From contig NC_043020.1 of assembly GCF_006345805.1 (NCBI RefSeq), positions 9,982,001 to 10,046,000 of the forward strand: a stretch of DNA of 64,000 bases, in the 5' to 3' direction. The stretch is from Octopus sinensis (taxonomy: Eukaryota). The position numbers and the translations under genes were made by a program. The notes beneath the pieces are model-generated. The model searched no databases. It saw only the letters and a program-made list of their open reading frames with translations, and had not been told where the DNA came from. Numbering within the stretch: the first letter of the stretch is position 1; each line of letters opens with the position of its first letter. Positions 8,019 through 11,793 of the stretch are shown one piece after another.

Positions 8019-11000
8019 ATGTCACCTAAACACCCTACGCCTTCTAAGGCTTCTGGCAGTGAATCTAAGCACCAGAAAAAGGTTATGACACTCCATGAGA
8101 AAGTACAACTGCTGGATATGTTTCTAAGCACCAGAAAAAGGTTATGACACTCCATGAGAAAGTACAACTGCTGGATATGTTCTAAGCACCAAAAAAGGTT
8201 ATGACGCTCCATGAGAAAGTACATGCTGGGATATGTTTCTAAGCACTAGAAAAAGGTTATGACGCTCCATGAGAAAGTACAACTGCTGGATATGTTTCTA
8301 AGCACCAGAAAAAGGTTATGAACTCCATGAGAAAGTACAATGCTGGATATGTTTCTAAGCACCAGAAAAAGGTTATGACACTCCATGAGAAAGTACAACT
8401 GCTGGATATGTTTTAAGAACACCAGAAAAAGGTTATGACACTCACCATGAGAAAGTACAACTGCTGGATATGTTTCTAAGCACCAGAAAAAAGGTTTTAT
8501 GACGCTCCATGAGAAAGTACAATGCTGGATATGTTTCTAAGCACCAGAAAAAGGTTATGACGCTCATGAGAAAGTACAACTGCTGGATATGTTTCTAAGC
8601 ACCAGAAAAAGGTTATGACACTCCATGAGAAAGTACAACTGTGGAGATGTTTCTAAGCACCAGAAAAAGGTTATGACACTCCATGAGAAAGTACAACTGC
8701 TGGCATTGTTTCTAAGCACCAGAAAAAGGTTATGACACTCCATGAGAAAGTACAACTGCTGGATATGTTTCTAAGCACCAGAAAAAGGTTATGACACTCC
8801 ATGAGAAAGTACAATGCTGGATATGTTTCTAAGCACCAGAAAAAGGTTATGACGCTCCATGAGAAAGTACAACTGCTGGATATGTTTCTAAGCACACCAA
8901 AAAAGGTTATGACGCTCCTATGAGAAAGTACAACTGCTGGATATGTTTCTAAGCACCAGAAAAAGGTTATGACACTCCATGAGAAAGTACAATGCTGGAT
9001 ATGTTCTAAGCACCAGAAAAAGGTTATGACACTCCATGAGAAAGTACAACTGCTGGATATGTTTCTAAGCACCAGAAAAAGGTTATGACGCTCCATGAGA
9101 AAGTACAACTGTGGATATGTTCTAAGCACCAGAAAAAGGTTATGACACTCCATGAGAAAGTACAACTGCTGGATATGTTTCTAAGCACCAGAAAAAGGTT
9201 ATGACCACTCCATGAGAAAGTACAACTGCTGGATATGTTTCTAAGCACCAGAGAAAAAGGTTTTATGACACTCCATGAGAAAGTACAACTGCTGGATATG
9301 TTTCTAAGCACCAGAAAAAGGTTATGACACTCCATGAGAAAGTACAACTGCTGGATATGTTTCTAAGCACCAGAAAAAGGTTATGACGCTCCATGAGAAA
9401 GTACAACTGCTGGATATGTTTCTAAGCACCAGAAAAAGGTTATGACGCTCCATGAGAAAGTACAACTGCTGGATATGTTTCTAAGCACCAGAAAAAGGTT
9501 ATGACACTCCATGAGAAAGTACAACTGCTGGATATGTTTCTAAGCACCAGAAAAAGGTTATGACGCTCCATGAGAAAGTACAACTGCTGGATATGTTTCT
9601 AAGCACCAGAAAAAGGTTATGACGCTCCACGAGAAAGTACAACTGCTGGATATGTTTCTAAGCACCAGAAAAAGGTTATGACACTCCATGAGAAAGTACA
9701 ACTGCTGGATATGTTTCTAAGCACCAGAAAAAGGTTATGACGCTCCATGAGGAAGTACAACTGCTGGATATGTTTCTAAGCACCAGAAAAGGTTATGACG
9801 CTCCATGAGAAAGTACAACTGCTGGATATGTTTCTAAGCACCAGAAAAGGTTATGACACTCTCCACGAAAGTACAACTGCTGGATATGTTTCTAAGCCCC
9901 AGAAAAAGGTTATGACACTCCACGAGAAAGTACAACTGCTGGATATGTTTCTAAGCACCAGAAAAAGGTTATGATACTCCATGAGAAAGTACAACTGCTG
10001 GATATGTTTCTAAGCACCAGAAAAAGGTTATGACATTCCATGAGAAAGTACAACTGCTGGATATGTTTCTAAGCACCAGAAAAAGGTTATGACACTCCAC
10101 GAGAAAGTACAACTGCTGGATATGTTTCTAAGCACCAGAAAAAGTTATGACACTCCACGAGAAAGTACAACTGCTGGATATGTTTCTAAGCACCAGAAAA
10201 AGTTATGACATTCCATGAGAAAGTACAACTGCTGGATATGTTTCTAAGCACCAGAAAAAGGTTATGACACTCCACGAGAAAGTACAACTGCTGGATATGT
10301 TTCTAAGCACCAGAAAAAGGTTATGACACTCCACGAGAAAGTACAACTGCTGGATATGTTTCTAAGCACAAGAAAAAGGTTATGACATTCCATGAGAAAG
10401 TACAACTGCTGGATATGTTTCTAAGCACCAGAAAAAGGTTATGACACTCCACGAGAAAGTACAACTGCTGGATATGTTTCTAAGCACCAGAAAAAGGTTA
10501 TGACATTCCATGAGAAAGTACAACTGCTGGATATGTTTCTAAGCACCAGAAAAAGGTTATGACACTCCACGAGAAAGTACAACTGCTGGATATGTTTCTA
10601 AGCACCAGAAAAAGGTTATGACACTCCACGAGAAAGTACAACTGCTGGATATGTTTCTAAGCACCAGAAAAAGGTTATGACACTCCACGAGAAAGTACAA
10701 CTGCTGGATATGTTTCTAAGCACCAGAAAAAGGTTATGACACTCCATGAGAAAGTACAACTGCTGGATATGTTTCTAAGCACCAGAAAAAGGTTATGACA
10801 TTCCATGAGAAAGTACAACTGCTGGATATGTTTCTAAGCACCAGAAAAAGGTTATGACACTCCACGAGAAAGTACAACTGCTGGATATGTTTCTAAGCAC
10901 CAGAAAAAGGTTATGACATTCCATGAGAAAGTACAACTGCTGGATATGTTTCTAAGCACCAGAAAAAGGTTATGACACTCCACGAGAAAGTACAACTGCT

Positions 11001-11793
11001 GGATATGTTTCTAAGCACCAGAAAAAGGTTATGACACTCCACAAGAAAGTACAACTGCTGGATATGTTTCTAAGCACCAGAAAAAGGTTATGACACTCCA
11101 CGAGAAAGTACAACTGCTGGATATGTTTCTAAGCACCAGAAAAAGGTTATGACACTCCATGAGAAAGTACAACTGCTGGATATGTTTCTAAGCACCAGAA
11201 AAAGGTTATGACACTCCACGAGAAAGTACAACTGCTGGATATGTTTCTAAGCACCAGAAAAAGGTTATGACACTCCATGAGAAAGTACAACTGCTGGATA
11301 TGTTTCTAAGCACCAGAAAAAGGTTATGACATTCCATGAGAAAGTACAACTGCTGGATATGTTTCTAAGCACCAGAAAAAGGTTATGACATTCCATGAGA
11401 AAGTACAACTGCTGGATATGTTTCTAAGCACCAGAAAAAGGTTATGACACTCCACGAGAAAGTACAACTGCTGGATATGTTTCTAAGCACCAGAAAAAGG
11501 TTATGACACTCCATGAGAAAGTACAACTGCTGGATATGTTTCTAAGCACCAGAAAAAGGTTATGACACTCCACGAGAAAGTACAACTGCTGGATATGTTT
11601 CTAAGCACCAGAAAAAGGTTATGACACTCCATGAGAAAGTACAACTGCTGGATATGTTTCTAAGCACCAGAAAAAGGTTATGACACTCCATGAGAAAGTA
11701 CAACTGCTGGATATGTTCTGGGAAGGTAAAAGTTATGCTGCAGTAGGTCACTATTATCTTGTTAATGAAAGCACCATATGCTACATAAAGAAG
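8019..11793 (+). pseudogene. pogo/Tigger-like transposase N-terminus (CENP-B/psq-type HTH), split by satellite expansion
   Basis: ATG at 8019 gives MSPKHPTPSKASGSESKHQKKVMTLHEKVQLLDM; after the array it continues FWEGKSYAAVGHYYLVNESTICYIKK, matching the Tigger pattern KVMTLxEKVxLLDM...AAV.RH..INES.VR.I.K. Confidence 0.8.
8064..11717 (+). repeat. 59-bp tandem satellite, about 62 copies
   Basis: Unit tctaagcaccagaaaaaggttatgacactccatgagaaagtacaactgctggatatgtt; period read directly from the sequence. Confidence 0.97.

What the first reader, a model, noticed from the sequence alone, without database searches (positions are those of the whole stretch)
8019..11793. 3.6-kb satellite born inside the DNA-binding HTH coding region of a Tigger/pogo transposase
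Seen: the 59-bp unit encodes SKHQKKVMTLHEKVQLLDM. The unique DNA on each side continues the same reading (MSPKHPTPSKASGSE before; FWEGKSYAAVGHYYLVNESTICYIKK after), so the pre-amplification sequence can be rebuilt exactly. Established: this pattern matches the CENP-B-family N-terminal HTH of Tigger transposases, and TE-derived satellites are known. A satellite still sitting in its birth site with both flanks intact is an unusually clear case. The 59-bp period breaks the frame, so it is non-coding. It may produce small RNAs against the parent transposon (inference).
Basis: partly seen in the sequence, partly recalled or inferred. Interest (0 to 1): 0.7.

Follow-up and report, generated by a model that had tools for sequence, protein, structure and literature searches.

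The report
Tandem array inside a dead Tigger fragment
A 59-base piece of a broken Tigger-type transposon in an octopus-like genome has been copied head-to-tail 62 times at this one spot, which is a clear but ordinary example of how junk transposon DNA turns into a tandem repeat.

Summary
Window 8064-11717 is a 59-bp x 62 head-to-tail array (96% matches). Removing 61 units restores an ORF of 60 codons, and that ORF is colinear, without gaps, with five unamplified paralogs in Octopus vulgaris.

The pogo/Tigger origin is supported. The collapsed peptide alone is below the Pfam cut-off for CENP-B_N (17.5 bits against 21.2). However, it is 58% identical (E 2e-19) to the N-terminus of a full-length protein with CENP-B_N, HTH_Tnp_Tc5 and DDE_1. 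A profile built from it finds 473 relatives.

- The host copy is a dead scrap, not an intact transposase gene. It runs only from about 370 bp upstream of the ATG to codon 60.
- At 11793 it abuts an inverted 70-90-bp piece of the same family's DDE domain, which carries a stop codon.
- No other part of the element lies in the 64 kb.
- By size and single-locus evidence this is a TE-derived minisatellite. I found no evidence that it is a dispersed satellite.
- It has stops in all frames, no RNA-family match and no notable predicted fold.
- Small-RNA production could not be tested.
- The left third of the array is rich in indels, probably from assembly noise.

This is a known kind of event. Interest is low.

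The parts
7648..8018 (+). 5' non-coding part of the Tigger-like fragment (about 370 bp upstream of the ATG). It includes a (CT)21 microsatellite at 7756-7798. The element is truncated on its 5' side here.
   Evidence: blastn: window 7647/7648-11793 (collapsed) matches O. vulgaris copies L012 5643-6180, L010 5593-6180 and L009 5653-6180 at 78-83%. The alignment shows those three copies stay homologous to each other further upstream, while the window diverges before about 7645. TRF finds the CT repeat.
8019..8063 (+). Codons 1-15 of the transposase remnant (MSPKHPTPSKASGSE), forming the left flank of the array.
   Evidence: Translation. Aligned to P0004 residues 1-15 and to P0161 and P0160.
8064..11717 (+). 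Array of 62 units of 59 bp. It derives from codons 16-35, which encode the basic arm and helix 1 of the CENP-B_N HTH. Four unit haplotypes lie in blocks. Units 1-21 are rich in indels.
   Evidence: TRF, unit table, haplotype string and lag identities, stops in all frames.
11718..11793 (+). Codons 36-60 (WEGKSYAAVGHYYLVNESTICYIKK; helices 2-3 of the HTH), forming the right flank of the array. Homology to all paralogs on this strand ends at 11793.
   Evidence: tblastn with five full-length transposases ends at 11793.
11794..11870 (-). Inverted scrap of the DDE_1 catalytic domain of the same family (NVEFLPANTTSRI*PMDQSVFHTFKTFF, with an in-frame stop). It is joined head-to-head to the HTH fragment. 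The junction is ambiguous within 11778-11796.
   Evidence: tblastn finds minus-strand hits with all five queries; for example P0004 aa 332-358 at 59% identity, E 2e-5 in the whole window. blastn: window 11796-11867 matches L011 7087-7016 (86%) and L010 7082-7012 (83%) in reverse orientation.

Best explanation
This is a locus-specific, non-coding tandem array of minisatellite scale. It arose after insertion, inside a dead and rearranged fragment of a Tigger1-like (pogo-family) DNA transposon in an octopod genome.

Shown:
- A 59-bp segment covering codons 16-35 of the transposase remnant is present 62 times where every examined paralog has it once.
- The boundaries are defined to the base, with no microhomology in the 59-bp register.
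- The host fragment is truncated on both sides and joined to an inverted DDE scrap of the same family.

Inferred:
- One founding 59-bp duplication occurred by non-homologous or slippage-type repair, possibly in the same repair history that produced the inverted scrap.
- Growth and local homogenisation followed, by unequal sister-chromatid exchange or replication slippage. This would explain why the unit variants sit in blocks.
- The array has no function and is a neutral by-product.
For: - Array and frame continuity.
- Family assignment. The collapsed peptide matches CENP-B_N at 17.5 bits, profile positions 2-44. Relative P0001, 67% identical to the collapsed peptide, scores 35.3 bits, above the cut-off. 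A profile search found 473 hits. Full-length hits P0004, P0044, P0093 and P0141 carry CENP-B_N + HTH_Tnp_Tc5 + DDE_1 above the cut-offs and are named 'tigger transposable element-derived protein 1-like' or 'HTH CENPB-type'. The peptide against P0004 gives 58% identity, E 2e-19.
- Unamplified paralogs. Five O. vulgaris loci (L001, L009-L012) and the contigs L002-L007 each hold the segment once, at 88-93% identity to the unit.
- Different flanks. Upstream of the shared fragment the window matches the paralog loci only through a SINE-like repeat (7427-7505); 7506-7646 has no match. These are therefore dispersed TE copies, not orthologs.
- Post-insertion origin. All 62 units share A39, where the paralog copies that cover the position have G.
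- Growth by local exchange. The G27 variant, which is the CpG state seen in four of five O. vulgaris copies, is confined to units 3-31. The C33 and T28 variants fall in units 27-60.
- Non-coding status. There are stops in all frames, no Rfam family, and a fold z-score of +0.57.
- Dead host copy. No other element piece lies in the 64 kb apart from the inverted DDE scrap.
- Precedent: PMC3389668, PMC6947457. TcMar-Tigger is known in cephalopods (PMC8967140).
Against: - I could not search the source genome, so 'locus-specific' rests on 64 kb of window plus about 92 kb of O. vulgaris paralog loci.
- No orthologous empty site from a sister species was obtained.
- Neither classical initiation signature is present. 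There are no flanking direct repeats of 5 bp or more in register, and the terminal unit is complete. The founding step is therefore unexplained, as it is for about 94% of human TE-derived arrays (PMC3389668).
- Units 1-21 carry 34 indel bases against 9 substitutions. This looks like consensus error, so copy number and left-part sequence may be inexact.
Confidence: 0.8

Rival explanations
1. The array is one locus of a dispersed satellite family, or of a non-autonomous TE variant that carries internal tandem repeats. In that case this is not the birth site.
For: TE-borne internal repeats that seed satellites are common in molluscs (PMC3879986; review PMC6947457). The source genome could not be searched. 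A related decayed Tigger-like copy elsewhere (L008) also carries internal tandem duplications, 30 bp x3 and 24 bp x8.7.
Against: Both array flanks are colinear with the parental coding sequence. The host fragment has no termini and is fused to an inverted scrap, so it cannot be mobilised as a unit. There is no second unit in the window, and only single copies in all five O. vulgaris paralogs. The array-specific 52-codon reading frame has no match among 5.8 billion predicted proteins; this is weak evidence, because such short ORFs are rarely called.
Confidence: 0.1
2. The array length, or part of its sequence, is an assembly artefact: over-expansion, collapse, or an unpolished long-read consensus.
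For: In units 1-21 indels outnumber substitutions about 4:1 (34 against 9 bases). Units 22-62 are almost all exactly 59 bp, and the private substitution rate is similar in both parts, about 0.2-0.3%. Tandem repeats are a known source of assembly error (PMC6868369, title and abstract).
Against: Unit variants are shared and arranged in blocks (G27 left; C33/T28 right; one recombinant GCC unit). An artefact grown from one unit would not give that pattern. The only N gap, at 63389-63488, is far away. So the array itself is very likely real, and only its exact length and its left third are doubtful.
Confidence: 0.07
3. The array is functional: a source of small RNAs (piRNA or siRNA) against Tigger elements, or a regulatory or structural element.
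For: Only the general precedent that TE fragments in clusters yield piRNAs (my own knowledge). The array lies downstream of the element's own 5' region.
Against: There is no expression or small-RNA data. No RNA family matches and the predicted fold is no better than shuffled sequence. The family looks long dead in O. vulgaris: the copies examined in detail (L001, L002) carry frameshifts and stops, and all five end early. A 59-nt target would be a very narrow defence.
Confidence: 0.03

Closest known systems
TE-derived single-locus minisatellites/satellites (Ahmed & Liang 2012, PMC3389668)
   Same: The repeat unit is an internal piece of a TE. The array sits inside the parental TE copy. It expanded locally after insertion. 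It lacks both classical initiation signatures, as do most of their cases.
   Different: Their catalogue is human and dominated by Alu, L1 and LTR elements. This case is a DNA-transposon coding segment in a cephalopod. With 62 units it is far longer than their typical arrays, most of which have two units.
pogo/Tigger (TcMar-Tigger) DNA transposons; Tigger1-like transposases
   Same: The parental sequence encodes the CENP-B-type N-terminal HTH. Paralogs continue into HTH_Tnp_Tc5 and DDE_1. The inverted scrap carries the conserved ..FLPxNTTSxxQPxDQGVI.. motif.
   Different: The window copy is not an element. It is an internal fragment of about 550 bp (once collapsed) plus a 70-90-bp inverted scrap, with no termini and no intact domain other than the first HTH.
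Tandem-repeat-containing MITEs and TE-seeded satellites of molluscs (e.g. DTC84 in Donax, PMC3879986; review PMC6947457)
   Same: A tandem array associated with a DNA-transposon derivative in a mollusc.
   Different: In those elements the repeats lie between TIRs, are carried by many mobile copies and are non-coding in origin. Here I found no TIRs, only one locus, and a unit that comes from coding sequence.
Internally deleted or rearranged DNA-transposon derivatives made by abortive gap repair with filler DNA (my own knowledge; P element, Ac/Ds, mariner)
   Same: A short inverted piece of the same element is joined at an internal breakpoint. This is the kind of filler seen after template switching during double-strand-break repair.
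   Different: Classical derivatives keep both termini. This one keeps neither, so later truncations, or an unrelated juxtaposition of two fragments, cannot be excluded.

Membership tests
pogo/Tigger transposase (origin of the unit) | N-terminal CENP-B-type HTH (Pfam CENP-B_N) | tested here: met
   The collapsed peptide alone scores 17.5 bits, E 0.0032, below the cut-off of 21.2, but covers profile positions 2-44 of 53. P0001, 67% identical, scores 35.3 bits. The peptide is 58% identical, E 2e-19, to residues 1-60 of P0004, whose own CENP-B_N hit is above the cut-off.
pogo/Tigger transposase (origin of the unit) | Second DNA-binding domain HTH_Tnp_Tc5 following the first HTH | tested here: not met
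   Absent from the window copy: plus-strand homology stops at codon 60. It is present just below the cut-off in paralogs L001 and L002 (20.7 and 21.2 bits against 22.2), and clearly present in P0004, P0044, P0093 and P0141.
pogo/Tigger transposase (origin of the unit) | DDE_1 catalytic domain | tested here: not met
   Only an inverted scrap of about 27-30 aa with an in-frame stop survives, at 11794-11870 on the minus strand. Full domains are present in relatives, and a DDE_1 ORF lies next to paralog L010.
pogo/Tigger transposon (as a mobile element) | Terminal inverted repeats flanked by a TA target-site duplication | tested here: not met
   The window copy starts inside the element: O. vulgaris copies extend further 5'. 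No inverted match to its 5' part lies downstream. The family's true termini were not determined, because all five O. vulgaris copies end at different points.
Satellite DNA in the strict sense | Head-to-tail tandem arrangement of a defined monomer | tested here: met
   62 units, 96% matches.
Satellite DNA in the strict sense | High genomic abundance: long arrays at several loci, typically heterochromatic or centromeric | not testable with these tools
   No octopod genome can be searched by DNA here. The available evidence points the other way: one 3.65-kb array, no other unit in 64 kb, and single copies in five paralogous loci. By unit size (more than 10 and less than 100 bp) it falls in the minisatellite class (PMC3389668).
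TE-derived single-locus tandem repeat | Unit homologous to an internal TE segment, array flanked colinearly by the rest of that TE copy, paralogous copies unamplified | tested here: met
Tandem-repeat-containing MITE | Array lies between TIRs in many dispersed copies with variable repeat number | tested here: not met
   I found no TIRs. No other array-bearing copy was found.
piRNA/small-RNA source locus | Small RNAs map to the locus | not testable with these tools
   No expression data. There is no Rfam match and no notable predicted fold.

The most novel reading that the evidence does not exclude
The array could be the founding or one surviving locus of a young, lineage-specific satellite that has spread or will spread in this octopod. 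Alternatively it could be a transcribed locus that yields small RNAs against the HTH-coding region of Tigger elements. Either way it would give a base-resolved view of satellite birth from transposase coding sequence, with a blunt (zero-microhomology) founding duplication linked to a template-switch repair event.
Probability: 0.06. Interest if true: 0.5.

Novelty: new member of a known kind. Interest (0 to 1): 0.2.

Why it matters
The matter is mostly practical.
- It is a tidy teaching example of a TE fragment turning into a tandem array. The unit boundaries are known to the base, five unamplified paralogs serve as controls, and a CpG-decay marker polarises the unit variants.
- It is likely to be a length-polymorphic marker.
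- It is a warning for annotation: O. vulgaris gene models P0003 and P0160-P0163 are built on dead copies of this family.
- It is a warning for assembly quality in arrays.
- It does not open a new question about satellites or transposon control.

Tried and rejected
1. Exon reading. Homology of three relatives stopped exactly at YIKK, followed by GT, so I considered a first exon of a host or domesticated gene. I rejected this. O. vulgaris and Logan copies run on without an intron, and the downstream DNA is an antisense DDE scrap.
2. TE 5' end at 7727 (TA|CAGCC...), inferred from L001 alone. I rejected this when L009, L010 and L012 showed homology from 7648 and continued further upstream among themselves. 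L001 simply has an internal deletion.
3. A 3' TIR or MITE-like structure. No inverted match was found. Window 11868-11960 has no homology to any copy.
4. The rest of the transposase elsewhere in the window. blastn, tblastx and tblastn with paralogs and five full-length proteins found nothing beyond the scrap.
5. Founding microhomology. None exists in the 59-bp register. A TCT would fit a 58-bp register, which is seen only in three units of the noisy part. A TTCTGG direct repeat is 70 bp apart and so out of register.
6. Higher-order repeat. Lag identities are flat at 97.9-98.9%.
7. Array-specific ORF search in the protein database. No candidate was found.
8. Rfam and folding of a dimer. Nothing was found.
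9. PDB sequence search with the 68-aa peptide. Only chance-level hits, E about 1.

Full report
**Observation**

Tandem Repeats Finder reports one array at window 8064-11717: period 59, 62.0 copies, 96% matches, score 6660. It is by far the strongest of 76 rows in a repeat-rich window. My segmentation gives 62 units. A perfect array has stops in all six frames, so it is non-coding. The window has the composition (42% GC) and the SINE load of an octopod genome. Its repeats match Octopus vulgaris chromosome sequence at 75-98%. The source species was not determined.

**What the unit comes from**

- The collapsed peptive alone is a sub-threshold CENP-B_N match: 17.5 bits against a cut-off of 21.2, E 0.0032, profile positions 2-44.
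- The link becomes firm through relatives. A word-indexed search found P0001, which is 67% identical and scores 35.3 bits for CENP-B_N.
- The same search found P0002 and an O. vulgaris model, P0003.
- A profile of the window peptide with P0001 and P0002 found 473 proteins at E <= 1e-3.
- The full-length hits P0004, P0044, P0093 and P0141 carry CENP-B_N, HTH_Tnp_Tc5 and DDE_1, all above the Pfam cut-offs. Their sources name them 'HTH CENPB-type domain-containing' (frog) and 'tigger transposable element-derived protein 1-like' (snake).
- The collapsed peptide is 58% identical to P0004 residues 1-60, E 2e-19.
- The unit covers the basic arm and helix 1 of this HTH. Helices 2-3 lie in the right flank.
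- TcMar-Tigger elements are already known in cephalopod genomes (PMC8967140).

**Unamplified paralogs**

I fetched five O. vulgaris loci: L001, L009, L010, L011 and L012. They align to the collapsed window sequence at 78-83% identity. The alignment runs from window 7648 (7799 for two of them) to 11793. Each holds the 59-bp segment exactly once, at 88-93% identity to the unit. So do the contigs L002-L007. Upstream of the shared fragment the window matches these loci only through a SINE-like repeat at 7427-7505, and 7506-7646 has no match. They are therefore dispersed copies of one TE family, not orthologs. This establishes that the family state is one copy, and that the 61 extra units (3,595 bp) arose at this locus or in this copy's own lineage.

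**The host copy is a rearranged scrap**

- Plus-strand homology to every relative ends at 11793. Paralogs continue past this point into ...NEVEIRTTVAV...ALWISDCKKKNIP... and, in L001, L002 and L010, on into DDE sequence, without an intron.
- tblastn with five full-length transposases then revealed a minus-strand match at 11867->11787: NVEFLPANTTSRI*PMDQSVFHTFKTFF against P0004 332-358 IEFLPANTTSLMQPMDQGVIRAFKALY. Identity is 59%, and all five queries agree.
- At the DNA level, window 11796-11867 matches L011 7087-7016 (86%) and L010 7082-7012 (83%) in reverse orientation.
- So element position about +180 from the ATG is joined to inverted position about +1082 of the same family. After about 75 bp the homology ends.
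- On the 5' side the window copy starts inside the element, because L009, L010 and L012 stay homologous to each other further upstream.
- No other piece of the element lies anywhere in the 64 kb, and I found no terminal inverted repeat.

**Internal structure of the array**

- There are four unit haplotypes at positions 27, 28 and 33: ACT, GCT, ATT and ACC. GCT is confined to units 3-31. ACC and ATT fall in units 27-60. One unit is a GCC recombinant. There is no higher-order period.
- G27 is the CpG state found in four of five O. vulgaris copies, so A27 is a CpG-to-CpA decay product.
- All units share A39, where the paralog copies that cover the position have G. That change preceded or swept through the array.
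- The block pattern fits growth by local unequal exchange or slippage.
- The boundaries cannot be shifted in the 59-bp register: A/T differ on the left and C/T on the right. The founding duplication therefore had no microhomology. The last unit is complete, and no flanking direct repeat of 5 bp or more is in register.
- This is also the situation for about 94% of human TE-derived arrays (PMC3389668).
- It is my inference, not shown, that the inverted scrap and the blunt duplication come from the same error-prone double-strand-break repair history.

**Quality caveat**

Units 1-21 carry 34 indel bases against 9 substitutions, 6 of which are the shared G27. Units 22-62 are almost all exactly 59 bp. 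The private substitution rate is similar in both parts. This pattern looks like unpolished long-read consensus rather than age. The exact copy number and the sequence of the left third should not be trusted without spanning reads.

**Function**

I found no sign of function. There is no ORF, no Rfam family in 6500-13500, and a dimer folds no better than shuffled sequence, z = +0.57. The small-RNA proposal cannot be tested here.

**Comparison with what is known**

- TE-derived tandem arrays are common. In human, 7,276 arrays, or 23% of all mini/satellites, derive from TEs. Of 5,932 clusters only 185 are multi-locus, and expansion is by local duplication after insertion (PMC3389668).
- Reviews list many TE-to-satellite conversions (PMC6947457), and molluscs have tandem-repeat-bearing MITEs (PMC3879986).
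- The present case is a new instance of this kind. It is notable only for its length (62 units), its coding-sequence origin and its clean boundaries.
- It does not meet the abundance criterion for satellite DNA on the evidence available.
- It fails the structural criteria for a mobile, repeat-bearing element.

**Verdict**

The Tigger origin is confirmed. The claims of a 'satellite', 'intact flanks', rarity and small-RNA production are overstated or untested. Interest is low, at 0.2.

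Noticed in passing
It looks like filler DNA from template-switch repair, or like a second truncated copy.
   Followed up: yes
window 8064-9302 (units 1-21): Indels outnumber substitutions about 4:1 here, whereas the rest of the array is almost all exact 59-mers. This is probably unpolished long-read consensus, so the copy number and left-part sequence are uncertain.
   Followed up: partly
window 7756-7798; L001 19375-19443: The 5' non-coding part of this TE family carries a microsatellite site that expanded differently in different copies: (CT)21 in the window, and a short (CT)n followed by a long (ATT)n run in O. 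vulgaris L001.
   Followed up: partly
window 17436-18800; also 1-209, 16285-16422, 16833-16990, 40967-41178: A 67-bp x 20 array has a unit (…GGCACATAAAAAGCACC…) that recurs as short arrays of about 61-67-bp period at four other places in the window. This may be a TE-borne internal repeat that expanded at one locus, making it a second TE-to-array case in the same window.
   Followed up: no
window 60831-61883; 23083-24896; 51277-52181; 58908-59505: There are other sizeable arrays: 36 bp x 29 (95% matches), a GTG/GTA-rich 21-24 bp x about 79, and long TATG and ATCT tracts. The region as a whole is rich in tandem repeats.
   Followed up: no
window 420-774, 25282-25840, 34246-34969, 53154-53526, 55755-56111: A 184-189-bp unit recurs in tandem (2-4 copies) at five places and looks SINE-related. 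Two SINE-like copies in the same orientation (about 7084-7505 and 12253-12687) also bracket the locus.
   Followed up: no
L008 3041-3131 and 3282-3489 (ENA ERZ26859072 ctg11811, organism unknown); proteins P0081, P0142: Another decayed Tigger-like copy carries a 30-bp x3 duplication in helix 3 of the same HTH (YGVNESTVRY repeated). It also carries a 24-bp x8.7 array a little further on. Internal tandem duplication seems to recur in dead copies of this family.
   Followed up: partly
L001 19615-20034 versus P0004; window 8019-11793 collapsed: Decayed octopus copies are 58-62% identical in protein to a frog (Leptobrachium) Tigger-like transposase over 60-111 aa. That is high for such distant hosts and compatible with horizontal transfer of this Tigger lineage. 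PMC8967140 also notes hits of other cephalopod DNA-transposon families to aquatic vertebrates.
   Followed up: no
O. vulgaris GCA_951406725.2: L001 10001-33610 (P0003); L009-L012 from position 6001 (P0160-P0163): Annotated O. vulgaris 'genes' are built on dead fragments of this transposon: a 'hypothetical predicted protein' and four 'transposable element-derived 1-like' models. P0003 splices from a cryptic donor inside the HTH into unrelated exons within a 23.6-kb gene span.
   Followed up: partly
protein P0014 (687 aa): This protein has four matched CENP-B_N stretches, followed by HTH_Tnp_Tc5, and no DDE domain. It may be a domesticated multi-HTH relative. Its source organism is unknown.
   Followed up: no
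window 63389-63488: A run of 100 N (a scaffold gap) lies inside a 164-bp tandem/SINE region at the end of the window.
   Followed up: no
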